Positions 3,469 to 31,408 of a DNA stretch of 64,000 nucleotides are shown here, piece after piece; position 1 is the stretch's first letter, and each line of letters begins with the position of its first letter. The stretch is taken from positions 62,001-126,000 of IMG/VR virus record IMGVR_UViG_3300032334_001259. One strand, written 5' to 3'. The translations under genes were made by a program, and so were the position numbers. Under the pieces are notes generated by a model that saw nothing but the letters and a program-made list of their open reading frames with translations, made no database searches and had not been told where the DNA came from.

Positions 3469-4980
3469 TTATTGGTTTGAACTTGAAGTTATTTTGTTAT
3501 TTTGAATATAGTTTTTTGCAAGTGGAACTAAATTAAATCCAGGTGGCACATTTAATTTATTAATATGACTGCTTGCTAAAGTAATATCACTGTCAGTATA
3601 ACCTTGATTTTTTAATGTTTGAATCCAGTCGTCACTATTATACACAGCGTTTGGTGGACTTGTAGGGTCTGCAAAACTAATACTGCTTTGAACATAATTA
3701 GGCTGACCATAATCTACAGCACCAATACTTGCAACGCTATTTGGATCATCAATATATTGTTGTGCTATTACTGCTTTTGCAGTTTCTGTGTTGCTAAAAC
3801 CACCATAGCTTGCCAATGTTGCCGTAGGAACAGTCGCAATAAAATTAGATGCATCATTTACTTGTTGAGCACTATAACCTTGGTTCCATAAAGTAGTTTG
3901 CCAACTATCCGTTTGAAATGGATTTGTTGGAACAAAACTACGTGATGTATCTATACTTTGTGTATTTGTATCTAAATCACTTGGTCTAGGTGGTGGCAAT
4001 GGTACTGCTGACGCAATAGGTCGTATATTTGTATCTGCTAGTGGAAATTCTGTACTGGCATTAGTTTGATTTAAATCATTATTTTGAATAATAGCATTAA
4101 TTTCTTCTGGACTGAAACCTTGATTTGCAGTCGGATTGTAATATGCACCTTGGTCAACAAAACCGAAAGAACCTTGTTCTTGTTGATAATACTGTCCACG
4201 ATTTACAAACTGGCTACCTTGTTGGTTAAGTTGTCCAGTAACTGGATTAATAAAATTATTTCTACCTAAAGCGCCACTTAACGGACTTAATCTATCATCA
4301 TAATAAGCAGTCTCATTAAATCCTGGCATATCTTTAACATAACCACCTTCATAAGTCACACCATTGTAACGAACTTGCATGGTTGCTTCCATGAGATTAG
4401 TGCTATCAGAATAATCATGTGTATCATGTTGGAAACTTGTAATAACAGGACTCATAAGAGTTATCTTATTTGCCTGACCACTTTGCATACTATATATTTC
4501 AATTGCACTAAAAAATGGTGTCAAACTACCATTATCTAAACCCCAAGCACTGTGAAGTCGTTGTTGATAACGATCATCATAATTATAATCATTCAGACTA
4601 TAAAGTCCATCAGCATAATAATAATTGTAATAATCTTGCCATAATTCACGTAAACCATTTTGATTATCATCATGAAATTTTATAGTTACTGGTTCGTATT
4701 TTATACGATCTTGAATATAGGTATGTTTATTATATTGGTTTAAGTCCTTAACATCCATAGTAAATTTTGGTAAGTCAATGCTTTTTACAAGATAACCAAT
4801 TTCACGTGTTGAAACATAACGTGGTACGCCTTGACCTAAAATAAAATTTACATAAAAAAGAAATTTATATTTTGGACTACGACTAAAATTACTAGTTCTA
4901 AAAATTTGAGCGGCGTGTGCATAATCATGAACATCACCGCCGCCCAATAAACTATTCAAAAAACCCCATAAACTAGCCAT
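3469..4980 (-). CDS. Tail-tube-fold baseplate protein (gp19/gp54/gp48-like) with long C-terminal extension
   Basis: N-terminal KYKFLFYVNF...VKSIDLPKF...QYN...IKYEPVTIKFHDD is the tail-tube fold signature; adjacent to gp19. Confidence 0.7.
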   Translation of the reverse strand: MASLWGFLNSLLGGGDVHDYAHAAQIFRTSNFSRSPKYKFLFYVNFILGQGVPRYVSTREIGYLVKSIDLPKFTMDVKDLNQYNKHTYIQDRIKYEPVTIKFHDDNQNGLRELWQDYYNYYYADGLYSLNDYNYDDRYQQRLHSAWGLDNGSLTPFFSAIEIYSMQSGQANKITLMSPVITSFQHDTHDYSDSTNLMEATMQVRYNGVTYEGGYVKDMPGFNETAYYDDRLSPLSGALGRNNFINPVTGQLNQQGSQFVNRGQYYQQEQGSFGFVDQGAYYNPTANQGFSPEEINAIIQNNDLNQTNASTEFPLADTNIRPIASAVPLPPPRPSDLDTNTQSIDTSRSFVPTNPFQTDSWQTTLWNQGYSAQQVNDASNFIATVPTATLASYGGFSNTETAKAVIAQQYIDDPNSVASIGAVDYGQPNYVQSSISFADPTSPPNAVYNSDDWIQTLKNQGYTDSDITLASSHINKLNVPPGFNLVPLAKNYIQNNKITSSSNQ

Positions 4981-5730: not shown

Positions 5731-8700
5731 TTATACACCCAAAGTTAAACTTGGAGTAATATTACTTAATCCACCTTGGTTTGCATTTGTGCCAGCAATT
5801 GCACCAGTGTTCAAGATACGAACAGGGATATAAATGAACTCTACAGCCTTTGTTGGTTCAATTGCGATATCAATATGCAATTCATTTTGATCAATAGTAG
5901 ATGGTGTATTGTTTGTAGTATCACAAACTACAAGATAATCATACACACCACGTTGAGTTTTAACATCGTTTAGCAATGCTGATACAGCGTTTGTAGCAGT
6001 ATTACGTGTTACAGTGTCGTTTGGCTCAAATACCAATGGTTTAGCAATACGTTCAAGGTTGTAACGTAGATAGTTGATTAGACGTGCAACGTTGATACGG
6101 TCAAGAGCAGTAGCAGTTGCCTGACGAGTATGGTTACCATAGTTAAGAATACCTTCTGTTGGGAACACTGCAACTGGATTTACGTTATTGCTATATAGTA
6201 AATCACGTAGACCTTGGTTAGTTCCAATACTATAGAACTTACCAGTTACACGGTCAACATAACCAATCTTGATTACATTGTCAATTTTACCACGCAATGA
6301 ACCTGCTGGTGCAAACCATGGAGCACTTGCTTGATCGCTCTTAATAATCATACGTAGGATTGCATGTGTAATAGGAACAACAATCTGACCATTGCCATCA
6401 AGTGCATTTGTATAACCTGCACCTGGATAGAACACAGCAGTATAACTATCACTCGTAGCAAGACCATCTTCACCAGTGCTTGCAACACCACTTGTGTTAG
6501 TAACATAGTTGCTTACACTTGTAGTATCAGCAGTAAGACCCATTGGTGTGTCAGCAATGATAAATCCAGTGTTACGACGATCATTATTAAGTGAAATTAG
6601 ATTTGTCGTCAATTCTGGATATCCTGGACATACAAGAAGATTAAAGTTAGTTTGATCTTCACGTATTGTTGTATTATTATCAACTGCTGTCTTAAGTGCA
6701 TTTACAACAACATTGCGAACTGCCTTACGACCCATGTAAGGAACACCAGCAGTATTGCTACCACTTACACTTTGCCAAGTAGCAGCAACAGCAGGAATAG
6801 TTCCTAATGGATAGTTTGCACTTGTAAACTTGTTAGCCTTGTATTGTTTTACATTATAAGTGCTACGACGAGTATTGAATAGCAACATACCACGTGGATA
6901 TAGTTGTGGATTTGGTGCATCTAAATCAAGATAATTGCTTGTCAATAGACTTACAATTGTTGGCTTTGCATCAAGAGCAGGATCTACTGTGCCGGAAGTA
7001 TCCCAACGTGCATCAGCAAACAAGATACCATTTTCAGTTGTATTATCAGTGTTATCAATTTGAACCCACTGTGCGGTGCCGCTTACACTCTGCCAACGAT
7101 AAATCTTTGGATAGTTTTCAAGATCACTTGTATCTACCCATAGGTCACCATAAACAAGACTTGAATTGTCAGTTTGTTTTGTAGGTTGACTTGCACTAAT
7201 AATTGGACCAAGTGGATCTGTATTTGCAAGATTATATCCACGTGCATCACTACTTACGTTTTGATAACCTCTCCAATCAGTGCCATTACTAATCATAATG
7301 TCAACTTCAAGTGGAGTTGAAGCATACCAATAAGTGCCGTCATCAGGTGCTACAACTGGTTGTGTAGCTTGTTGGTAAAGATTACTTGCAGGATACCAAT
7401 TACTACCAATAAGATAACCATCACTTTCATCATCAAATACGTTATCAAGACTTGTTGTAATACCAGCAGCAGTAATTGGAGTTCCACTTACGTTGTGAAA
7501 TTCAATATCACCACCATTTGTATGACTAATTGAAATGTAATTAGTTGCACTTAATGATGCAGTAAGATATGGAACATTAGCCGCAAGCACATCACTTACA
7601 AAACTTGCCGCACTTGTGCTACTCAATGTAATTGTATATGCGCTACTCCAGCTGCTACTACCAGGACTTGTTGTTCTTATAGTAAAGCTATTACCAGCAC
7701 TAAATGTTGGATTTGCAACACTACCAGTAACAACAGTAGCAGTTCCACCACCATTCCATTGTAATAGTTTATATGTGCCTGTGTTTGTACCAAGAACATC
7801 ATATTCAACAAATAGCGTATCTGCTGCAATACCTAAACCACCAAGTGTTGGATCAAGATTATAAAGTGCAGTTTTACGATCTGCATAAACTGGTGCAGGT
7901 ATAGTGTCAAACGCCATAGTAGCACTGTTATAACGATAAATCTTAAAGTTTGCACCACCGTTTACAGCGGTAGTTTTCATCCAAATACTACCTGTTGGAT
8001 GTGGTTGCGCATCAGTTGATTTCCATGCAGGAACACTGTAGTGTGCACCATAACTAAGTGCAGGACTCCAGTATGTACCTGGTGTTAAGCCAAGAGCATT
8101 AAGTGGGTTACCACTGCTATTACTAATAGTAATTTTACCGTCAGCTGCAGCATTAGCACCACCACTCTTTGCACTTGCGTTTGCAAACAAATTAAAGTAA
8201 CCATTAACAACTTGTGCATTAATACCAGACAAACCAGCACTATTAATAGTTGCGGCAAGATTTGACGCACTTGTGTTTGCTATTGTAAATGTATTACCAT
8301 TTATTACAAGTGCTGTTGCAAGAGTTAACGCACTTGCCTGTGCATTACCAATAAGTGTTGGTGTCTTGATTGCCCATGCATTACTACCAATTAGGTTCCA
8401 AGAATTATCATAAGCCTTGCGATATATTGGATTCTTAACATCAGTTGCATTGATTGCATAACTTCCAACTGTGCCAATATTACTATAAGGAACACCACCA
8501 GTTAACTGTGTTGAATCTGTAATTACAGTTGGGCTTGTTTGTGTGAATGTTTCACTTGTATAATCCCATTCAAATACGCCATAACTTGTAGTTGCGGTAT
8601 CCATCCATTGTGTTCCACCATCTGGATTTGCATATGGACGTGAACTACTGCCAGTTAACTGTGCAAGGTCAACATTTGCACGAAGAACATAAACTTGATT

Positions 8701-9012
8701 AGTAACACCAAGTGTGCTGTGTGCAGCCATAAGACCGTATTCTGCGGTCTCGCTACCAAATAAACGATTTCCACTTGCATCTGTTGGGAAAATCGGTAGT
8801 CCGTAGTTTGTAAGAAGGTCTTTTTGACTTGTAAGAAGTTGTAATGTATTAACTGTTGATTCAGTTGTATAACTTGCAATACCGCCAGCAGTGCTTGTTT
8901 TGTCTGTAGCAGTAGCAAGAAGAACGAAAGGTACTGTGCCAGGACCAGTAGGAGCGTAATTGCTTTGATCAATTACTGTTACTGATACGCCAGGAGATGT
9001 TAAAGTTGCCAT
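5731..9012 (-). CDS. gp18: Tail sheath protein
   Basis: 1093 aa; N-terminal LTSPGVSVTVID; C-terminal WFAPAG..RG, DRINVARL, FEPND..TR, IEPTKAVEFIYI; late promoter CTAAATA at 9040-9046. Confidence 0.95.
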   Translation of the reverse strand: MATLTSPGVSVTVIDQSNYAPTGPGTVPFVLLATATDKTSTAGGIASYTTESTVNTLQLLTSQKDLLTNYGLPIFPTDASGNRLFGSETAEYGLMAAHSTLGVTNQVYVLRANVDLAQLTGSSSRPYANPDGGTQWMDTATTSYGVFEWDYTSETFTQTSPTVITDSTQLTGGVPYSNIGTVGSYAINATDVKNPIYRKAYDNSWNLIGSNAWAIKTPTLIGNAQASALTLATALVINGNTFTIANTSASNLAATINSAGLSGINAQVVNGYFNLFANASAKSGGANAAADGKITISNSSGNPLNALGLTPGTYWSPALSYGAHYSVPAWKSTDAQPHPTGSIWMKTTAVNGGANFKIYRYNSATMAFDTIPAPVYADRKTALYNLDPTLGGLGIAADTLFVEYDVLGTNTGTYKLLQWNGGGTATVVTGSVANPTFSAGNSFTIRTTSPGSSSWSSAYTITLSSTSAASFVSDVLAANVPYLTASLSATNYISISHTNGGDIEFHNVSGTPITAAGITTSLDNVFDDESDGYLIGSNWYPASNLYQQATQPVVAPDDGTYWYASTPLEVDIMISNGTDWRGYQNVSSDARGYNLANTDPLGPIISASQPTKQTDNSSLVYGDLWVDTSDLENYPKIYRWQSVSGTAQWVQIDNTDNTTENGILFADARWDTSGTVDPALDAKPTIVSLLTSNYLDLDAPNPQLYPRGMLLFNTRRSTYNVKQYKANKFTSANYPLGTIPAVAATWQSVSGSNTAGVPYMGRKAVRNVVVNALKTAVDNNTTIREDQTNFNLLVCPGYPELTTNLISLNNDRRNTGFIIADTPMGLTADTTSVSNYVTNTSGVASTGEDGLATSDSYTAVFYPGAGYTNALDGNGQIVVPITHAILRMIIKSDQASAPWFAPAGSLRGKIDNVIKIGYVDRVTGKFYSIGTNQGLRDLLYSNNVNPVAVFPTEGILNYGNHTRQATATALDRINVARLINYLRYNLERIAKPLVFEPNDTVTRNTATNAVSALLNDVKTQRGVYDYLVVCDTTNNTPSTIDQNELHIDIAIEPTKAVEFIYIPVRILNTGAIAGTNANQGGLSNITPSLTLGV

Positions 9013-9736: not shown

Positions 9737-10489
9737 TTATCCGATAACAAACCACATTGGTGTTTCACCAGTCATACTATTGGTGATTTCAAGTTCAAGT
9801 GCATCTAATTTGGTTTGACCACGTGTGAGAAGGTCGGTTCCATTTAAACTACTGCCACCCTGTGGACCAGGCAGTGTGCTAAACTTACTACGTGCTTCAC
9901 CCAAAATCATCATACATTTTGCTAAAGTATATTCACGAAGCCATGGTTTGCTATAGATATCAGTTAATAATGTAATATCTGGTTTATAATTTTCTGTCCA
10001 AAGCAAAATGGTTTCTTTGTCACTACGTGGACGGCGCATGATTGTAAGTTCTTTTGTAACCGTATTAAACTTATAATTTAAAAAACCACCAAACATCTTT
10101 GCTGCTTCTTTTAAGAAAGCACTATAAAGATAGTATGTTGCCAAACCACCAACACGACCACTTTGTATCATATAAAAGTTTACGAAACCTGCTTCAAATG
10201 GTTCATATTGGCTACTTGTGCCACTGTTTGCACCAATATTACGCTTAAAACAATTACGAACACTTATAACTTCATTTGGTAATGTATAAGTGTTTGTATC
10301 TTGTATGAGTTCTAAAAATGAATAACTTTCTTCAACACTGTTAGCACTGCGTTGGCGATAGCGAATAATAGCCTGAGTTAACGCAGTTTCATAATGAATT
10401 GGATCAAGTTCAATGTCAATGATACCATCACCAAGGGTATAACGGACATAATCAAATACTTCTGTTTTTAATTCTTGCAGTGTTGCCAT
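9737..10489 (-). CDS. gp13: Neck protein (head-tail adaptor)
   Basis: LGDGIIDIELD, WLREYTLAKC..LGEARSKF..LPGPQGG.SLNG; late promoter CTAAATA at 10495-10501. Confidence 0.85.
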   Translation of the reverse strand: MATLQELKTEVFDYVRYTLGDGIIDIELDPIHYETALTQAIIRYRQRSANSVEESYSFLELIQDTNTYTLPNEVISVRNCFKRNIGANSGTSSQYEPFEAGFVNFYMIQSGRVGGLATYYLYSAFLKEAAKMFGGFLNYKFNTVTKELTIMRRPRSDKETILLWTENYKPDITLLTDIYSKPWLREYTLAKCMMILGEARSKFSTLPGPQGGSSLNGTDLLTRGQTKLDALELEITNSMTGETPMWFVIG

Positions 10490-11767: not shown

Positions 11768-12049
11768 CTAAACTCCAAATCTCATAAGATAGTAAGTTAA
11801 ATCTTCTGGTTCAAATTGGGCGGTTACAAGTACACGATAATCATCTGTCACAATATCGTATTGGGTATAGAAAGTTACGCTATCTTTAATAGCATTTTCC
11901 CACACCCATTGATAATTTTCACACTTACTCCAGTGCACATTTGCTTCACCTTTGGCATCATGCTCAACTACTTTTGGTGATTTACCAACGTGACCAGAAT
12001 AAACATTAGTGCGAAACACTGTAACAGGTTTAGAAGGGGATATCTTCAT
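11768..12049 (-). CDS. Small protein of the F-x-L/M-R-W/F-G family
   Basis: Likely start MKISPSKP (RBS aaggaag); ends EDLTYYLMRFGV. Confidence 0.6.
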   Translation of the reverse strand: MKISPSKPVTVFRTNVYSGHVGKSPKVVEHDAKGEANVHWSKCENYQWVWENAIKDSVTFYTQYDIVTDDYRVLVTAQFEPEDLTYYLMRFGV

Positions 12050-12446
12050 CTTCCTTACCTTCATGCCAATCTGGACCTGGATCTTTGCCATCAACAATTG
12101 CTTTTGTCATACGATCCATTTTACGCTTGGTTGTGAACTTTTCTTCACGGTCAGCAATAGTTTTGTCCTTAAAGCCAAGCATATTCAAATACTTACGACA
12201 TTCGTTCCAACCGTGCATAAAGTGAATGCAATCTTCTGCACTGCCACTAAAGATAGTAACACCACGTGTGTAAATTGGTAGAGTATCACCATCATCTTTA
12301 GGAATTATAAGTGCAAACTCTGTGCCATTATTAGTTTCATAAGCATATGAATTAAATGCACCACGACTTGGACCGATTTCAAATCCAATCTTGTTGGCAA
12401 GACCTGTCATATCGTTGATAGTGCGGTAATGATTATAATTTGTCAT
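12030..12446 (-). CDS. Hypothetical protein
   Basis: 138 aa; acidic C-terminal tail EDEDIPF resembles an SSB-type interaction tip. Confidence 0.65.
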   Translation of the reverse strand: MTNYNHYRTINDMTGLANKIGFEIGPSRGAFNSYAYETNNGTEFALIIPKDDGDTLPIYTRGVTIFSGSAEDCIHFMHGWNECRKYLNMLGFKDKTIADREEKFTTKRKMDRMTKAIVDGKDPGPDWHEGKEDEDIPF

Positions 12447-12766
12447 GTTTCAAATCCTATTACAAATTGAACTAAATCTTCTTCTTGCAAATAAACATGG
12501 TAGCGTGTGTAAGTTTCACGCATTTTATATACTTGCGGTTTAGGTCTTTCATAGTTTTCACGATAAACACTTGCATAATGTGGTGACCATAGATAAATGT
12601 CACGCAACTCGCAAATGTTTTGTTTAAACCAATTTTCAACATTAATGCAATTTTGTCTGTCACGCACAATAATACGATGGCTGTAATGTTCAACCATTTT
12701 ATTACGACCATCTAATTTTGCCCAACTGATACGTGGGTTAATATATCCGCCATCATATCTCATCAC
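12443..12766 (-). CDS. Hypothetical protein (divergent member of the small-protein family)
   Basis: 107 aa ending EEDLVQFVIGFET. Confidence 0.6.
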   Translation of the reverse strand: MMRYDGGYINPRISWAKLDGRNKMVEHYSHRIIVRDRQNCINVENWFKQNICELRDIYLWSPHYASVYRENYERPKPQVYKMRETYTRYHVYLQEEDLVQFVIGFET

Positions 12767-12773
12767 GATTTAC

Positions 12774-12995
12774 CTATGTTTCAACCGTTTTCCAACCTTT
12801 TAATTCAGGATACAGATAATTTTCCAATACTACGACAGCATCACTCATTGCAATAAGTGCTGCATTTTTATCCGCATCTGCTTCATCATCCATAAGCACA
12901 TCAATTTCTATTGCTAATAATTGGACAATGCCTTCAAGTCGCTCACGCAACTGCGGATCAAGATTTGTGATGTTGCCAGTGCTTGTCTGTTCCAC
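12774..12995 (-). CDS. Hypothetical helical protein
   Basis: 73-aa ORF with GTG start. Confidence 0.5.
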   Translation of the reverse strand: MEQTSTGNITNLDPQLRERLEGIVQLLAIEIDVLMDDEADADKNAALIAMSDAVVVLENYLYPELKGWKTVET

Positions 12996-13359
12996 CTAAA
13001 TGTCCCCAATCACTGTCAACTGTCATTTTACTTGTAATACCACCACGTGGACGGAACTCAATCTCAAGGCGAATACGTTCAGGATCATATACTACCATAA
13101 GATGCTTGAACATAACATCAATGCAACGCTCATAACTGATAATTGTATCACGATACTGATAAAAGTATTCTTTTAGGCTTTTAAGTTCAATGGTTTTATC
13201 TTTGCCATAAAACCAAATTACAATATGTCCAAAATCAGGTTGATCGTGAACACCAAGAAATGTAAACTCTGGCACAGTGATACGTTGTTCATATCCACGT
13301 GCCGCATTAGGCAGTGCTTTCAGCACTGTAAAATCAATAGTATCCCAAAGTTTTTTCAT
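12958..13359 (-). CDS. queF: QueF-like T-fold protein (7-deazaguanine pathway family) lacking the catalytic Cys
   Basis: PEFT...QPDFG, ELKSLKEY, SYE, PRGGI match unimodular QueF; EFTSLCPxTGQPDF is replaced by EFTFLGVHDQPDF. Confidence 0.75.
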   Translation of the reverse strand: MKKLWDTIDFTVLKALPNAARGYEQRITVPEFTFLGVHDQPDFGHIVIWFYGKDKTIELKSLKEYFYQYRDTIISYERCIDVMFKHLMVVYDPERIRLEIEFRPRGGITSKMTVDSDWGHLGGTDKHWQHHKS

Positions 13360-13360
13360 A

Positions 13361-14521
13361 TCACTTTACCGCTTTTAAGAGGATAGTATCACCGTTCAAG
13401 CGTCCTGTCAAGCCAATTTCGACAGCACGTATATTATCAAGGAACTTACGAAGTGCAACCTTGCCACTGTTCTGGAACTCCTTGATTTGTTCCTTTGGCT
13501 TGCGAAGTGTCTTTGCTACACTTTGCTTGGCATCATATCCAAGAATAGTGCTACCCTTGATACCCAATACACCACTACTTGCATCAGCAACATATTTGCC
13601 AATCTTACGTGTCTTGATATTGTAAACCCATAATTCAGTTGCATTCAACACATCAACAGGGCTGATGCTAACAAGGTTCAATTCATCAAACTTTTGCAAG
13701 AACTTAACGTTTTTTACAAGTTTTTCCTTGCTTACAGGACGTGGCTTACGAACCTTGCGAACAGCACTCTTAACATTGCCATAAGTTGTAAGTGCATCAA
13801 ATAGGGATTTATACCACGTATCATAACGCTTGAAATCTGTCTTTGTCATCCAAGCATAGGCTTCACGTAAATCTGCGTCACCTTTCTTGTTTTGGCTTTC
13901 AAGTAATTCACCATACTGTGCCGCATACTTTTCACGTATACGGCTACAGAAAGCCTGTGGCATATTCTTCTCACGGAAGTAAGCCATAAAATCAGGCAAT
14001 TCAATACTACCTTCAATCATTTCATCATACTTGGCTTCAAGTTCACCAATAGTATCATCTAACTTTTCTGCCATAATTTCGGCAACATTGCGTTTTGGTA
14101 CATCCTTAACTACCTTTTTAGTAGCCAGTTTTTCACGACCATATGCAAGCAATTCTTCTAATTTGTTTACAATATATTCAGCATCATGTGCCAATGGTGC
14201 GCCATTAAGAATCATCTTGCTGGCGCTACCAATTGTAATACCGACCCGATTATCATCGCATTCAGCAAAAGCACTAATTTCTGCCTTGCCCCACTTGTAA
14301 TATGTCTGCCCAAATTCTACAACATATTTCCGCATATCACCAGCGGTCATATAATAATTGTAAAAATAAAAGGCATGAGTAATTTCCTGACGCTTCTTCT
14401 CGTCAGTCCATTTACTGGCACCATCCCACTTTGGTTCTGGACCAGTAAACTTCTCGTCCATAAACTTGGGGGTTGAAACCTTACGTTGTGGTTTTTTAGC
14501 GATCATCAATCGGTTTACCAT
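13361..14521 (-). CDS. Conserved hypothetical protein of T4-like phages
   Basis: 386 aa, basic; C-terminal LWVYNIKTRK...IKGSTI...KTLRKP...GRLNGDTILLK. Confidence 0.75.
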   Translation of the reverse strand: MVNRLMIAKKPQRKVSTPKFMDEKFTGPEPKWDGASKWTDEKKRQEITHAFYFYNYYMTAGDMRKYVVEFGQTYYKWGKAEISAFAECDDNRVGITIGSASKMILNGAPLAHDAEYIVNKLEELLAYGREKLATKKVVKDVPKRNVAEIMAEKLDDTIGELEAKYDEMIEGSIELPDFMAYFREKNMPQAFCSRIREKYAAQYGELLESQNKKGDADLREAYAWMTKTDFKRYDTWYKSLFDALTTYGNVKSAVRKVRKPRPVSKEKLVKNVKFLQKFDELNLVSISPVDVLNATELWVYNIKTRKIGKYVADASSGVLGIKGSTILGYDAKQSVAKTLRKPKEQIKEFQNSGKVALRKFLDNIRAVEIGLTGRLNGDTILLKAVK

Positions 14522-15048
14522 ATATACTTCCTTTCGCTTGACCAGAAACTATTACCGTTCCAGTCTTGTTGATCCTGATAATCCCAAAATTCATTAGAGT
14601 AACCAGTCTTATCACCGATCAGTGCATTTGTCAACTGTTCTTTTGAGATACCATGTTGGGTATAACCTTCCATGCACATATTATAATAATGTGTGGATGG
14701 ATTGCTTACATAATCTTGGTCATTCATCATATAAACCCAAGCAACACCATATCCATTACCAGTTTCTACCCATGCACGTTGACGTAGGTAATAACTTGGA
14801 AAACTTTCAAGACGATCAAGTGCTTGTAGGCATTTATCGGTTATATCCCACAAAACACCTTCTACTTGACTTTCCCAATCTAATTCAACATCCGCATGAC
14901 CACGAAATACAAACTTGTAACCTGGCAAAATAGCCGCACCAATAACTTTGCTATCAGGGCAACGACTTGCCATTTGTTGTTTGTTTGTATTCATTCCGTA
15001 ACCGAAATAAAGATGTCTATTCTGCAATTCGTAATCTACCGTATTCAC
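14515..15048 (-). CDS. Gamma-glutamylcyclotransferase (GGCT/AIG2-like)
   Basis: LYFGYGMN..QM..RCP, VEGVLW, LDRLE..P..Y motifs. Confidence 0.85.
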   Translation of the reverse strand: MNTVDYELQNRHLYFGYGMNTNKQQMASRCPDSKVIGAAILPGYKFVFRGHADVELDWESQVEGVLWDITDKCLQALDRLESFPSYYLRQRAWVETGNGYGVAWVYMMNDQDYVSNPSTHYYNMCMEGYTQHGISKEQLTNALIGDKTGYSNEFWDYQDQQDWNGNSFWSSERKYIW

Positions 15049-15096
15049 TATACTAATTTACACCTCACTATGTTGGGCATAATTGCCCGTAGGTTT

Positions 15097-15161
15097 AAAT
15101 TACCATATTTTAGACCGTTGTCAAGAGAAAAATTGACTTGGCTAAAATATAGTTATATATT
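15097..15161. promoter_or_regulatory. Divergent sigma70-type promoter pair
   Basis: Minus strand CTTGACA (15125-15119) with TAATTT; plus strand TTGACT (15133) with TATATT 17 nt downstream. Confidence 0.55.
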
Positions 15162-15176
15162 AAAGAATGAAAAAGC

Positions 15177-15740
15177 ATGAAAATGGTTGAAAAATTCCAA
15201 TTATCTCTTATTTTACAAGGATTTGAGTGTAATGGTTATCCAAAATGTAGGATAACTTTCAATGATCAAATTTTGTATGATAGTCAAATTATTGACACAT
15301 GCAGTGTTAACTGCGACATTACATTAGAAAAAACAAATATAATAAAAATTGAACAATATGACAAAAAATTTGGTGAAAATGGTATTTGGGATACTAAATT
15401 AGAAAATGGAAAAATTGTTCAAGACAAGTATATTATTATAAGAAAAATTTGTATAGATAACATTAATTTACAACCATGGTGGCATTTTGGTTTGTTAGAT
15501 AATGAAATAATTTTTGAACATCAAAATGAAATTGGATTATACAAAAATTCTACTTTCAATTTAAAATTTGATAGTCCACTATATGATTGGTTAATTTGTA
15601 AAAAAAGTGAGGGATTTAAAGAAATTGGACCAGCTTGGAAAAAATCAAGTTTAAATAGTTTTGCTGATGGTTATAGTATAACCATAGAAAGATTTGAAGA
15701 ACTTATTGCAGAGGCTAAACAGTTATTAAAAAAATTATGA
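15177..15740 (+). CDS. Hypothetical beta-rich protein coupled to the radical SAM gene
   Basis: 187 aa, very AT-rich; 4-nt overlap with the next ORF. Confidence 0.7.
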   Translation: MKMVEKFQLSLILQGFECNGYPKCRITFNDQILYDSQIIDTCSVNCDITLEKTNIIKIEQYDKKFGENGIWDTKLENGKIVQDKYIIIRKICIDNINLQPWWHFGLLDNEIIFEHQNEIGLYKNSTFNLKFDSPLYDWLICKKSEGFKEIGPAWKKSSLNSFADGYSITIERFEELIAEAKQLLKKL

Positions 15741-17173
15741 TAAAAACACTTGTTATAACAGTTCCTTTTTTAGAATCATTCAGACCTCCAATAAGTGGTG
15801 CCACTATATGTTCAATTGCAGAAAGTTGTGGTCATAAAGTAAAAGCATGGGATGCAAATATTAAACTTTATAATTCTATTGGTAATACAAAATTTTATGA
15901 TTTACAAAACCAATTTACTAACTTGAAAGTATTAGAACAAAATAGTATTTCTTTAGTAGAAAATTTTGTAGCAAGTTATGATTTTTCAAATTTTGATTAT
16001 ATTTTAATAAGTTTATTTTCTTCTTGGTCACATAATTTTAATACTATTTTATTAAAACATTTAAAAAAGGTTAATAATAAAGCAATTATTGTTATTGGTG
16101 GACCTGGTGTCAGCAACACATTTGAAAATAATAGTTCATATGGCATGACAATGTTACAAAATAATTTATGTGATTATTATGTTGATGGTGAAGGTGAAAA
16201 GACTTTATTAGAAATATTTAAAAATAACAAAAATTATCCTGGTATAAACGGAATACCTCCACAACAAATTATGGATTTAGATTCTTTACCTATACCAAAC
16301 TACGATTATTATAATTTAGAAGATTATGATTATTTGTTAGAAAATGAAAAGGATTTATTTGTTTATGGTAGTAGAGGTTGTGTAAGAAATTGTAGTTTTT
16401 GTGATGTTCCCACTTATTGGCCAACATTTCGTTGGAGAAGTGGTGACAATATTGCAGAAGAATTAATTAAAAATTGGGAAAAATATGGTATCAGGCATTT
16501 CTTTTTTACAGATAGTTTATTAAATGGAAACTTGAAAGCATTTCGTTTACTTCATGAAACACTGGCTAAAAATAATTTGCCAAAATTTCATATTGCAGGT
16601 TATGCAATTATTCGTCCTAAAAACCAACATCCTAAAGAGTTGTTTGACATGCTACAAAATACAGGCACACATTTTTGGAGTGTAGGAGTTGAACATGGAA
16701 GTGATTCTGTGAGAAACAACATGAGAAAAAAATTTTCTAATGAAGATATTGATTGGCATTTAGAACAATCTTATAGAATTGGTTTACAAAATAATTTTTT
16801 AATGATGCCTACATGGGTAACAGAAACGTTGGATGATCACAAAGAATACCTACAAATATTTCCACGTTGGCAAAAATATGTTGCAACAGGGACTATTTCA
16901 TCTATGGTTCTTTCTCCACTTCTTTATGCTTATAGAAATACTCCATTAACAAGCCATGAATACAACATTGATTTTATTCCAAATGAACTTGAGGCATTAA
17001 GAGAAATTTTATGGATTAACCGTGATAATCCTGAATTAAATTTAGTAGAAAGATTTCGTAGAACATTAGCAATTTGGGAACAAGCTGTAGTTTACAAGTA
17101 TCCTTTGTTAATGGCTGAAAATAAAATTATGCGGTTAAATGCAACTATTAAAAAAGTCTTAGAAATATTATAA
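15737..17173 (+). CDS. Cobalamin(B12)-binding-domain radical SAM protein
   Basis: N-terminal B12-binding-like domain (RPP, IVIGGPG, GEGE), SRGC-x3-C-x2-C (GCVRNCSFC), FFFTDSL, GVEHGS. Confidence 0.88.
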   Translation: MIKTLVITVPFLESFRPPISGATICSIAESCGHKVKAWDANIKLYNSIGNTKFYDLQNQFTNLKVLEQNSISLVENFVASYDFSNFDYILISLFSSWSHNFNTILLKHLKKVNNKAIIVIGGPGVSNTFENNSSYGMTMLQNNLCDYYVDGEGEKTLLEIFKNNKNYPGINGIPPQQIMDLDSLPIPNYDYYNLEDYDYLLENEKDLFVYGSRGCVRNCSFCDVPTYWPTFRWRSGDNIAEELIKNWEKYGIRHFFFTDSLLNGNLKAFRLLHETLAKNNLPKFHIAGYAIIRPKNQHPKELFDMLQNTGTHFWSVGVEHGSDSVRNNMRKKFSNEDIDWHLEQSYRIGLQNNFLMMPTWVTETLDDHKEYLQIFPRWQKYVATGTISSMVLSPLLYAYRNTPLTSHEYNIDFIPNELEALREILWINRDNPELNLVERFRRTLAIWEQAVVYKYPLLMAENKIMRLNATIKKVLEIL

Positions 17174-30178: not shown

Positions 30179-31408
30179 ATGGCTGATGTAAAGATACTGC
30201 ACGGTGACTGCCGTGAACAACTCAAAACTCTACCCGACAATAGCATTGATAGCATTGTGACTGATCCACCTTATGGTTTAAGTGTTGAACCAGATATGAC
30301 AGAAGTTCTTCGTCACTGGTTAAATGGTGATGACTATGAACATACTGGCAAGGGTTTTATGGGTAAAAGTTGGGACAGTTTTGTTCCAGGACCAAGTGTA
30401 TGGCGTGAATGTTTGCGTGTTCTTAAACCAGGCGGTCATATGTTATCATTCTTTGGTTCAAGAACTTATGATTTAGGTGTCACAGCAATTAGATTGGCTG
30501 GTTTTGAAATACGTGACCAGATTATGTGGGTTTATGGAACAGGATTTCCAAAGAATCATGATATAAGCAAGGCAATTGACAATGCTGCTGGTGCTGAAAG
30601 AACTGTTGGTGGTAGAGTATGGAGCGGCGGCGCACGTAGTGGTGGTATTATTAAAGATGATGCCAGTGAAACTACCTCAGAACGAATCATTTATGATGAA
30701 CCAGCAACCCCAGAAGCAAAAAAGTGGCAAGGTTGGGGGACAGCACTTAAACCATCACATGAACCAATTTGTGTTGCACGTAAGCCAATAAGTGAAAAAA
30801 CTATTGCAGATAATGTATTGCAATGGGGTGTCGGTGCATTGAATATTGATGCATCACGAGTTGGAGAAGGTGCAAAAAAGTGGGTTACACCACGAGGTGG
30901 TATTTGGACAACAGATAGTGAAGCAAAAGCGGAACTTGTTGATAATCCATTAGGTCGTTGGCCAGCAAACTTTATCCATGATGGTAGCATAGAAACAGAA
31001 TGGGAAAAGTTTTTTTATTGTGCGAAGGCAAATAATACAGACCGCAATGATGGTTTAGATGATTTTGAAGGTGGCAAGACCAATGATGGTCGTAAAAAGG
31101 ATGCGGATAATGCATATCAACGTGGTGCATCAATACGTAAAAACACACATCCTACTGTAAAACCTACTGATTTAATGCGTTATTTGTGCAAAATGATCAC
31201 TCCAACTGGTGGAACAGTCCTAGACCCATTTACTGGCAGTGGTTCTACTGGTCGTGGTGCTGTGTTAGAAGGTTTTAATTTTATTGGTATTGAAATGAGT
31301 GAAGAATATGTTGAAATTGCTAAAGCACGAATTGCTGTGGTAGAAAAAAAGGTAGCACAAGTTGAAGATAAAATTACTACATACAATAATCTATTTGAGG
31401 AAGAATAA
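30179..31408 (+). CDS. DNA amino-methyltransferase (N6-A/N4-C, beta class)
   Basis: TDPPY catalytic motif; HPTVKP..LMRYL; VLDPFTGSGSTG SAM-binding motif near the C-terminus. Confidence 0.92.
   Translation: MADVKILHGDCREQLKTLPDNSIDSIVTDPPYGLSVEPDMTEVLRHWLNGDDYEHTGKGFMGKSWDSFVPGPSVWRECLRVLKPGGHMLSFFGSRTYDLGVTAIRLAGFEIRDQIMWVYGTGFPKNHDISKAIDNAAGAERTVGGRVWSGGARSGGIIKDDASETTSERIIYDEPATPEAKKWQGWGTALKPSHEPICVARKPISEKTIADNVLQWGVGALNIDASRVGEGAKKWVTPRGGIWTTDSEAKAELVDNPLGRWPANFIHDGSIETEWEKFFYCAKANNTDRNDGLDDFEGGKTNDGRKKDADNAYQRGASIRKNTHPTVKPTDLMRYLCKMITPTGGTVLDPFTGSGSTGRGAVLEGFNFIGIEMSEEYVEIAKARIAVVEKKVAQVEDKITTYNNLFEEE

What the first reader, a model, noticed from the sequence alone, without database searches (positions are those of the whole stretch)
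12958..13359. QueF-like protein with the catalytic cysteine replaced
Seen: EFTFLGVHDQPDF where QueF and QueF-L have EFTSLCPxTGQPDF, so there is no Cys and the loop is one residue shorter. The preQ0-binding Glu motifs are kept. Established: that Cys forms the thioimide with preQ0, and phages use QueF-family enzymes for 7-deazaguanine DNA modification. Inference: a T-fold protein with different chemistry or a ligand-binding role, possibly making a new deazaguanine DNA base. No folE/queD/queE/queC/dpdA is visible in this window.
Basis: partly seen in the sequence, partly recalled or inferred. Interest (0 to 1): 0.6.

Follow-up and report, generated by a model that had tools for sequence, protein, structure and literature searches.

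The report
Cysteine-less QueF relative tied to SAM recycling
A freshwater jumbo phage carries an intact member of a large, undescribed branch of the QueF enzyme family in which glycine replaces the catalytic cysteine; this branch sits beside methionine and S-adenosylmethionine recycling genes in phages and bacteria, which points to a new function and not to a new DNA base in this phage.

Summary
Window 12958-13359 (-) encodes a 133-aa QueF-fold protein with EFTFLGVHDQPDF. Gly36 replaces the thioimide cysteine and the loop is one residue shorter. The proton-donor Asp, both base-binding Glu and the NADPH-linked QueF motif are kept. This is not decay. Gly is invariant in all 121 close homologues and in a monophyletic "G-type" clade with further fixed changes (Phe34, Ser75-Tyr76-Glu77-Arg78). 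The clade occurs in many phages and at least 71 bacterial species. dN/dS is 0.06-0.09.

The complete 338-kb genome has no TGT/DpdA, QueC, FolE, QueD or QueE-like gene.

Gene neighbourhoods point elsewhere. G-type genes abut MetK, SAH hydrolase, MTA/SAH nucleosidase or MetH in 40 of 70 viral loci. In 15 bacterial loci they lie between the two halves of a split methionine synthase.

My best reading (about 0.4) is an NADPH-dependent reductase acting on a folate- or pterin-like substrate that supports homocysteine remethylation and SAM regeneration. Simple MetF or DHFR replacement was tested and rejected. A subset of related phages also link the gene to FolE/QueD/QueE-like/PRTase without QueC, so a deazaguanine role not involving a nitrile remains a live rival. 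I found no published description.

The parts
12958..13359 (-). G-type QueF-like gene (133 aa, P0001)
   Evidence: ORF and translation. Pfam QueF at 67 bits. AF2 model with pLDDT 87.8; best Foldseek match is B. subtilis QueF 4fgc/4f8b, TM 0.76, rmsd 1.4-1.6 A. dN/dS 0.06-0.09 against the nearest relatives.
13231..13269 (-). Active-site loop EFTFLGVHDQPDF. Gly36 (13252-13254) replaces the catalytic Cys, the loop is one residue shorter, and Asp42 (the proton donor in QueF) is kept.
   Evidence: Alignment to 4f8b. All 121 close homologues have EFTFLG[VAG]xxQPD[FY]. In the G-type clade, G36 and F34 are each invariant (1.00), against C 1.00 and S 0.74 in canonical QueF.
13165..13188 (-). QueF motif ELKSLKEY (E58, K60, K63, Y65). 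In QueF this is the NADPH-linked motif and carries the N9-binding Glu.
   Evidence: Invariant or nearly so in both G-type and canonical sequences. The motif's role is taken from PMC5699537 and PMC13740343.
13126..13137 (-). Clade signature SYER. Ser75 replaces the stacking Phe95, Tyr76 replaces His96, Glu77 is the kept base-anchoring Glu97, and Arg78 is new.
   Evidence: S 0.97, Y 0.97, E 0.95 and R 0.86 in the G-type clade, against F 1.00, H/Y, E 1.00 and variable in canonical QueF. SYER is present in 70 of 71 bacterial G-type ORFs.
13361..14521 (-). Upstream 386-aa gene of unknown function. Its TGA stop lies 1 nt before the QueF-like ATG, so the two are probably co-translated.
   Evidence: ORF list and junction sequence. 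Matches only phrog_11903, of unknown function. No Pfam, PDB or Atlas lead.
14515..15048 (-). Gamma-glutamyl cyclotransferase-like (GGACT/AIG2) gene at the head of the same minus-strand gene run.
   Evidence: Pfam GGACT 50 bits, phrog_2520. The same neighbour lies upstream of the gene in the closest relative, L218 (same contig as L009). There are three paralogues in the genome.

Best explanation
P0001 belongs to a distinct, ancient and functional clade of the QueF T-fold family, here called G-type. It is not a nitrile (preQ0) reductase, and in this phage it is not part of a 7-deazaguanine DNA-modification pathway. It keeps the parts of QueF that hold a 2-amino-4-oxo heterocycle (Glu77, Glu58), donate a proton (Asp42) and are linked to NADPH binding (ELKSLKxY). 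It has lost the covalent nucleophile and rebuilt the pocket around the position where the nitrile carbon would sit (Phe34, Gly36, shorter loop, Ser75, Tyr76, Arg78). By gene association the clade works in the methionine/S-adenosylmethionine cycle.

Most likely mechanism (inferred, not shown): direct hydride transfer from NADPH to an imine or iminium-type centre on a folate- or pterin-like substrate. Examples are the N5-linked one-carbon unit of methylene-tetrahydrofolate or an oxidised methyl-folate. This would sustain homocysteine remethylation and SAM regeneration for a phage that encodes SAM synthetase, DNA methyltransferases and 11 radical-SAM enzymes.

Shown: the altered but conserved active site, the fold, purifying selection, the absence of the deazaguanine genes, and the neighbourhoods. 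Inferred: NADPH use, the substrate class and the physiological role.
For: Distinct clade:
- The G-type clade is monophyletic with 100% support.
- Its signature residues are fixed.
- There are 382 clusters of close homologues. About 70 of the top 150 representatives at 50% identity carry the signature.
- dN/dS is 0.06-0.09.
- The predicted fold matches QueF.

No deazaguanine pathway in the complete genome.

Link to the SAM/methionine cycle in viruses:
- SAH hydrolase immediately follows the gene in 23 of 42 loci related to the window, and MetK lies within 1-4.5 kb in 17.
- In a wider viral scan, 40 of 70 loci have a cycle gene within 3 kb. Directly adjacent are AhcY (18), MetK (16), MTA/SAH nucleosidase (4) and a DrdA/MtnB-like aldolase (2).
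- This holds even for viral G-types only 51-53% identical to P0001.
- One phage contig has MetH beside the gene.

Link in bacteria:
- In 15 of 71 loci the gene lies, on the same strand, between the homocysteine-binding piece of MetH and the pterin/B12/activation piece; 4 further loci have one MetH-like piece nearby.
- Other loci have a Cys/Met PLP enzyme (5), a pterin-binding protein (3), ThyX (3) or MetK (2) nearby.
- In one genome MetF directly follows the operon.

Canonical QueF co-exists with the G-type in 6 of 12 genomes and sits beside queC; the G-type never does. G000 itself has MetK and 11 radical-SAM genes.
Against: - No biochemical evidence exists.
- In the window itself the gene is not next to any SAM-cycle gene; MetK is about 245 kb away.
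- MetF is present in 10 of 12 G-type bacteria, and DHFR and ThyA in 11 of 12 as well as in this phage. The enzyme therefore does not fill an obvious gap in folate metabolism.
- All residues that bind the deazaguanine ring in QueF are retained.
- In one phage lineage the gene is also close to FolE, QueD (CxxxHGH type), a QueE-like radical-SAM enzyme and a purine phosphoribosyltransferase. This fits a deazaguanine substrate.
- Many bacterial loci show no informative neighbours.
- Neighbourhood counts are not phylogenetically independent.
Confidence: 0.4

Rival explanations
1. It is a 7-deazaguanine-pathway enzyme that acts on an intermediate other than a nitrile. One option is NADPH reduction of a 7-formyl or 7-iminomethyl deazaguanine, which corresponds to the second, cysteine-independent half of the QueF reaction. 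Another is processing of 7-carboxy-7-deazaguanine (CDG), with Arg78 holding the carboxylate. The product would feed tRNA, nucleotide or DNA modification. In this phage the substrate would have to come from the host.
For: All ring-binding and proton-donor residues of QueF are kept. In a subset of related phages the gene lies within a few kb of FolE, QueD-type PTPS (CxxxHGH), a divergent QueE-like radical-SAM enzyme and a xanthine-PRTase-like gene. No QueC or TGT is seen there. QueD is directly adjacent in 7 of 70 viral loci.
Against: The complete genome here has none of these genes and no transglycosylase. Bacterial orthologues are never beside que genes, whereas canonical QueF is. In the Cytophagales sample, 29 of 29 genomes without the G-type also lack QueC and QueF, so the G-type does not track a gap in the queuosine pathway. 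SAM-cycle neighbours are far more frequent than deazaguanine neighbours, 41 against 16 of 70 viral loci.
Confidence: 0.2
2. It is a non-catalytic ligand-binding oligomer. It would act as a buffer, sensor or sponge for a purine- or pterin-like small molecule, for example preQ0/preQ1, a folate, or adenine-type by-products of SAM use.
For: Cys-to-Ala/Ser mutants of QueF still bind preQ0 non-covalently (PMC13740343). The ring-binding residues are conserved. The protein is small, and by homology to decameric QueF it is probably multimeric. One homologue is fused or merged with a Lar restriction-alleviation domain.
Against: The proton-donor Asp and the Lys, Lys and Tyr of the NADPH-linked motif are invariant across the clade, which pure binding would not require. 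Placement inside bacterial biosynthetic operons suggests an enzyme.
Confidence: 0.15
3. It is a genuine preQ0-to-preQ1 reductase that works without the covalent thioimide.
For: In 6 of 12 bacterial genomes examined it is the only QueF-family gene, although QueA is present. One of these, Syntrophorhabdus, also has QueC and TGT. The review PMC13740343 mentions reports suggesting a pathway that bypasses the thioimidate in E. coli Cys190 variants.
Against: C55A/S and C190A/S mutants are reported as inactive. Specialists exclude Cys-less sequences from QueF (PMC5372742). The G-type co-exists with canonical QueF in 6 of 12 genomes. One G-type-bearing Actinomycetes MAG has no TGT. The phage has no use for preQ1, since it has no TGT/DpdA. 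The gene's neighbours are unrelated to queuosine.
Confidence: 0.07
4. One reading: the protein makes a new 7-deazaguanine base for this phage's DNA.
For: Phage QueF enzymes do serve DNA modification elsewhere (PMC10516641). Related phages carry FolE, QueD and a QueE-like gene.
Against: Every phage known to carry such bases encodes a DpdA transglycosylase (PMC10516641). None was found in this complete genome or in four related contigs. No precursor genes are present. The same clade is chromosomal in many bacteria.
Confidence: 0.05
5. It is a decaying, functionless remnant of QueF.
For: The catalytic Cys is lost, and the score falls below the NCBIfam equivalog cut-off.
Against: dN/dS is 0.06-0.09. 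Signature residues are invariant over a deep clade. The reading frame is intact in hundreds of homologues.
Confidence: 0.02

Closest known systems
Unimodular QueF (YkvM type; preQ0 reductase, EC 1.7.1.13; B. subtilis, PDB 4F8B/4FGC)
   Same: Same T-fold (TM 0.76, rmsd 1.4-1.6 A, 32-34% identity). Same size class. It shares the QPDF Asp, both base-binding Glu, the QueF motif and the C-terminal RGG.
   Different: Gly replaces the catalytic Cys and the loop is one residue shorter. The Pro-x-Thr-Gly of the loop is lost. Ser53 becomes Phe and Phe95 becomes Ser, which looks like a swap of the stacking aromatic. His96 becomes Tyr, and an Arg is conserved after the Glu. A DSDW...GG C-terminal tail is seen in the phage and bacterial G-type sequences inspected. 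There is no que-gene context; the neighbours are SAM/methionine-cycle genes.
QueF-L (archaeosine synthase of Crenarchaeota, PDB 5JYX/5K0P)
   Same: A QueF-derived T-fold that has changed chemistry. It is found as a weaker structural match.
   Different: QueF-L shows the opposite pattern. It keeps the Cys thioimide and has lost the NADPH site (PMC5699537 and PMC10516641). The G-type lost the Cys and keeps the NADPH-linked motif.
DpdL (QueD-like predicted CDG decarboxylase of phages, PMC10516641)
   Same: It is also a T-fold paralogue in which the catalytic Cys of the parent enzyme is replaced, and it occurs in phages that have FolE/QueD/QueE but no QueC.
   Different: DpdL belongs to a different family (PTPS/QueD, not QueF). 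It always occurs with a DpdA, and its function is likewise unproven.
MetF (methylenetetrahydrofolate reductase), as a functional analogy only
   Same: It is an NAD(P)H-dependent reduction that feeds methionine synthase, and metF sits in the same bacterial operon in one genome.
   Different: The fold is unrelated (a flavin-dependent TIM barrel). MetF co-occurs with the G-type in 10 of 12 genomes, so the G-type is not a simple replacement.

Membership tests
QueF (preQ0 reductase) | Catalytic Cys55 (B. subtilis numbering), which forms the thioimide | tested here: not met
   Gly36 aligns with Cys55. Of the 121 close homologues, 41 contain no Cys at all. PMC5372742 excludes sequences that lack this residue.
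QueF (preQ0 reductase) | Asp62 in the QPDF motif, and Glu97 | tested here: met
   Asp42 and Glu77.
QueF (preQ0 reductase) | QueF motif E(S/L)K(S/A)hK(L/Y)(Y/F/W), including Glu78 | tested here: met
   The sequence is ELKSLKEY. Seven of eight positions fit; position 7 is Glu.
QueF (preQ0 reductase) | Curated equivalog score (NCBIfam TIGR03139) | tested here: not met
   82.1 bits against a cut-off of 86.9. The Pfam domain PF14489 is met.
QueF (preQ0 reductase) | Genomic partnership with the preQ0 pathway and a transglycosylase | tested here: not met
   The complete genome has no TGT, QueC, FolE, PTPS or QueE-like gene.
QueF (preQ0 reductase) | NADPH-dependent reduction of preQ0 to preQ1 | not testable with these tools
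   This needs an enzyme assay or complementation.
QueF-L (archaeosine synthase) | Cys thioimide retained and QueF/NADPH motif absent | tested here: not met
   The Cys is absent and the motif is present.
GTP cyclohydrolase I (FolE), which is the annotation carried by phrog_5949 | Match to the FolE family, with its zinc-binding Cys/His site | tested here: not met
   The Pfam scan at E<=1 reports only QueF. The protein has a single Cys, which is not conserved.
Phage 7-deazaguanine DNA-modification systems (Dpd) | A DpdA/TGT-family transglycosylase in the genome | tested here: not met
   A six-frame PF01702 search at E<=1 found nothing in G000 or in four related contigs. A very divergent DpdA cannot be fully excluded.
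G-type QueF-like clade (defined here) | E-x-T-F-h-G-x3-Q-P-D-[FY], plus ELKSLKxY, plus S-Y-E-R | tested here: met
   All three elements are present. The protein lies within a 98%-supported viral sub-clade of the 100%-supported G-type clade.

The most novel reading that the evidence does not exclude
The G-type clade is a previously unrecognised enzyme of one-carbon and SAM metabolism. It would be a small, flavin-free, NADPH-dependent T-fold reductase acting on a folate or pterin one-carbon or imine centre. Bacteria would embed it in split methionine-synthase operons, and phages would carry it with MetK, SAH hydrolase and MTA nucleosidase to keep SAM flowing during infection.
Probability: 0.3. 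Interest if true: 0.78.

Novelty: new variant of a known kind. Interest (0 to 1): 0.62.

Why it matters
Databases name these proteins "7-cyano-7-deazaguanine reductase". That label feeds wrong predictions of queuosine and deazaguanine-DNA capacity in phages and in Bacteroidota, Kangiellaceae, Myxococcota and other bacteria. The clade shows the reverse pattern to QueF-L: the cofactor motif is kept and the nucleophile is lost. That makes it a clean case of new chemistry arising on the T-fold. Its repeated placement between the two halves of methionine synthase, and beside MetK, AhcY and MtnN in unrelated phages, gives a directly testable hypothesis for a missing accessory step in the activated-methyl cycle. 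It would also define a new class of viral auxiliary metabolic gene that supports heavy SAM use by methyltransferases and radical-SAM enzymes.

Tried and rejected
- **MetF replacement:** rejected. MetF is present in 10 of 12 G-type genomes, and in one it directly follows the operon.
- **DHFR or ThyA replacement:** rejected. Both are present in 11 of 12 bacteria and in the phage itself.
- **G-type replacing QueC/QueF in QueC-less Bacteroidota:** this looked attractive because QueE-like and PTPS genes are present without QueC. It was rejected because 29 of 29 G-type-negative genomes of the same order also lack QueC and QueF. Only 7 of 151 genomes of that order have the G-type.
- **Close relatives in deposited phages:** none. 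Nucleotide search gave no match, and protein hits are at most 38% identical and lie on genes annotated as QueF or GTP cyclohydrolase.
- **Fusions as functional clues:** the Lar fusion is uninformative. The FliM "fusion" is probably an assembly or gene-calling artefact.
- **Other bacterial neighbourhoods:** Myxococcota, Syntrophorhabdus, Neomarinimicrobiota and Marinilabiliaceae show no consistent theme beyond ThyX and a weak pterin-binding protein.
- **The co-translated 386-aa upstream gene:** no lead from Pfam, PDB or the Atlas.
- **The protein Atlas:** returned only automatically named QueF clusters.
- **Literature:** searches found no description of a Cys-less QueF clade or of a QueF-MetH/SAM link. 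This covers open-access text only.
- **Model coordinates:** not available, so I could not measure whether Arg78 points into the pocket.

Full report
**1. What is there**

The window is part of a 338,435-bp virus record with direct terminal repeats, rated complete. The window covers C1:62001-126000, and the genome has 35.5% G+C. It is a jumbo myovirus: the window holds a tail sheath (5731-9012), a tail tube (3469-4980), a head-tail adaptor (9737-10489) and tail-fibre proteins. Near-identical pieces of window 12000-15100 occur in lake, pond and freshwater-sediment metagenomes from 12 other studies.

ORF 12958-13359 (-) encodes 133 aa (P0001). Its ATG lies 1 nt after the stop of a 386-aa gene of unknown function. 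That gene in turn overlaps a GGACT-like gene.

**2.

P0001 matches Pfam QueF at 67 bits. It falls just below the NCBIfam preQ1-synthase equivalog cut-off, 82.1 against 86.9.

Aligned to B. subtilis QueF (4f8b, E 1.4e-12), EFTFLG-VHDQPDF faces EFTSLCPKTGQPDF. Gly36 therefore replaces Cys55, and the loop is one residue shorter. Asp42 (Asp62), Glu58 (Glu78), Glu77 (Glu97) and the QueF motif ELKSLKEY are kept. His96 becomes Tyr and Phe95 becomes Ser.

An AlphaFold model (pLDDT 87.8) superposes best on B. subtilis QueF, with TM 0.76 and rmsd 1.4-1.6 A. QueF-L and GTP cyclohydrolase I match further down the list.

**3. It is a clade, not decay**

- The word search returned 382 clusters. The 120 listed are 73-98% identical, and with P0001 all 121 sequences carry EFTFLG[VAG]xxQPD[FY]. 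Of these, 41 contain no Cys at all.
- The exhaustive representative search found 824 relatives. About 70 of the top 150 representatives at 50% identity carry x-T-F-h-G-x3-QPDF. Canonical EFTS[LV]CPxTGQPDF sequences appear only further down the list.
- In an alignment of 37 G-type against 27 canonical sequences, the clade-specific fixed residues are Phe34 (canonical Ser), Gly36 (Cys), Leu59, Ser75 (Phe), Tyr76 (His/Tyr) and Arg78. Shared residues are Glu31, Thr33, QPDF, E-K-S-L-K-Y, Arg70, Glu77, Pro93 and RGG.
Of 80 bacterial loci returned, 71 encode true G-type ORFs of about 145 aa, and 70 of those contain SYER. Taxa include Marinilabiliaceae, Chitinophagales, Cytophagales, Flavobacteriales, Kangiellaceae, Syntrophorhabdus, Myxococcota, Neomarinimicrobiota and SAR202. 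In the viral scan, 70 of 74 newly fetched loci did the same.
- In a tree, the G-type is one clade with 100% support, and P0001 sits in a 40-row, almost purely viral sub-clade with 98% support. Bacterial and viral rows interleave, with at least 5 switches.
- dN/dS against the three nearest relatives, which share the window's gene order, is 0.06-0.09.

**4. Not a deazaguanine DNA system here**

Six-frame family searches of the complete genome found no TGT/DpdA, QueC, FolE or PTPS at E<=1. tblastn with the relatives' FolE, QueD, QueE-like, PRTase, HhH-GPD-like and AhcY proteins found nothing.

All phages known to carry 7-deazaguanines encode a DpdA (PMC10516641).

Specialists define QueF by Cys55, Asp62, Glu97 and the QueF motif together, and they discarded sequences lacking any of these (PMC5372742). 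Cys-to-Ala/Ser mutants are reported as inactive but still bind preQ0 (PMC13740343). One passage of that review mentions a possible bypass of the thioimidate.

**5. What the neighbours say**

*Relatives of the window (42 loci).* SAH hydrolase immediately follows the gene in 23 loci. MetK lies within 1-4.5 kb in 17. A QueD-type PTPS (CxxxHGH) immediately follows in 9. FolE lies 5.7-7.7 kb away in 9. A divergent QueE-like radical-SAM enzyme is present in 15.

*Wider viral scan.* Forty of 70 loci have a SAM-cycle gene within 3 kb. Directly adjacent genes are AhcY (18), MetK (16), QueD (7), MTA/SAH nucleosidase (4; PDB 4pr3, E 2e-16) and a class-II aldolase resembling the 5-deoxyribulose-phosphate/MtnB group (2). 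Two loci read MetK - G-type - nucleosidase with no gaps. G-types only 51-53% identical to P0001 also sit beside MetK, with AhcY beyond it in some loci. Another phage contig has an 848-aa MetH two genes downstream.

*Bacteria.* In 15 of 71 loci the gene lies, on the same strand and nearly abutting, between a 332-aa homocysteine S-methyltransferase and an 895-aa pterin-binding/B12/activation protein, which together form a split MetH. Four further loci have one MetH-like piece nearby. Others have a Cys/Met PLP enzyme (5), a pterin-binding protein (3), ThyX (3) or MetK (2). In one Cytophagales genome metF follows directly.

Canonical bimodular QueF co-exists with the G-type in 6 of 12 genomes and sits beside queC. 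The G-type never does.

**6. Hypotheses tested and dropped**

- The G-type is not a substitute for MetF. MetF is present in 10 of 12 genomes.
- It is not a substitute for DHFR or ThyA. Both are present in 11 of 12 bacteria and in the phage itself at C1:208720-210091.
- It does not fill a QueC/QueF gap. All 12 G-type genomes have QueA and a QueE-like gene, and several lack QueC. However, in a sample of the same order only 7 of 151 genomes have the G-type, and 29 of 29 G-type-negative genomes also lack QueC and QueF.

**7. Best reading**

The clade retains what QueF uses to hold the ring, to protonate and, by homology, to bind NADPH. It has removed the covalent step that only a nitrile needs.

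In a pterin or folate bound like preQ0, the one-carbon unit on N5 would fall near the position of the nitrile carbon. This is my structural inference, not something measured. An NADPH-dependent reduction of an iminium or imine centre on a folate- or pterin-like substrate, supporting homocysteine remethylation and SAM regeneration, therefore fits both the chemistry and the neighbourhoods.

The phage would profit from this. It has MetK (C1:319965-321053), DNA methyltransferases and 11 radical-SAM genes.

I put 0.4 on this reading, with about 0.3 on the specific folate/pterin-reductase version. The main rival (0.2) is a role in deazaguanine metabolism that does not involve a nitrile, prompted by the FolE/QueD/QueE-like/PRTase sets in some relatives.

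**8. Novelty**

I found no description of this clade or of its link to MetH and SAM genes in the searchable literature. NCBIfam has no model for it. Source databases call it 7-cyano-7-deazaguanine reductase.

Noticed in passing
G000:C1 (whole genome); window 15737-17173 (+) is one copy: The phage encodes 11 radical-SAM genes. They include a tandem run at about C1:198087-203751 and others at about 270978-283032. The window copy has a B12-binding domain and a CxxxCxxC motif. This is an unusually heavy load of SAM-consuming enzymes.
   Followed up: partly
L002:3487-13370; L004:4344-10408; L175, L214, L223 and similar viral loci: Related freshwater phages carry FolE, QueD-type PTPS, a divergent 280-300-aa QueE-like radical-SAM enzyme and a xanthine-PRTase-like gene. 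No QueC or TGT was detected. This is the same enzyme set as the first steps of tubercidin-type deazapurine nucleotide synthesis (from my own knowledge, not checked here), so it could be a base-to-nucleotide route that needs no DpdA.
   Followed up: partly
L002:9492-10824: In one 341-kb relative the G-type gene overlaps a purine-PRTase-like gene upstream and a small HhH-GPD (DNA-glycosylase-like, weak match) gene downstream.
   Followed up: no
G017-G065 (sample of the Cytophagales order): Twenty-nine of 29 sampled genomes lack both QueC and any QueF-family gene. The five QueC-less G-type genomes examined (three of them not from this sample) keep QueA, PTPS copies and a QueE-like gene. This suggests an unexplained or salvage-based route to queuosine in these Bacteroidota.
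   Followed up: partly
G005, G006, G008, G012-G015: A second, longer QueA paralogue (about 400-440 aa, 320-350 bits) sits beside the normal QueA in many of these Bacteroidota.
   Followed up: no
window 14515-15048 (-); G000:C1:285891-286277 and 272500-272895: There are three gamma-glutamyl cyclotransferase-like (GGACT/AIG2) paralogues in one phage genome. One heads the gene run that contains the QueF-like gene.
   Followed up: no
window 12774-12995 (-): A 73-aa acidic ORF overlaps the last 38 nt of the QueF-like gene, which is the low-confidence C-terminal tail. It has no family match.
   Followed up: no
L007 (IMGVR_UViG_3300037189_015965, 111 kb): A second viral record encodes a 100% identical protein. 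It is probably the same phage, or a fragment of it, from another or the same sample.
   Followed up: no
window 30179-31408 (+): A 409-aa DNA methyltransferase (phrog_67). It is another SAM consumer in the window.
   Followed up: no
L044:6056-6937: A 293-aa product joins a Lar restriction-alleviation domain to a G-type QueF domain. It lies in a phage contig next to T4-type RNA ligase, Acb5 and nucleoside deoxyribosyltransferase genes.
   Followed up: no
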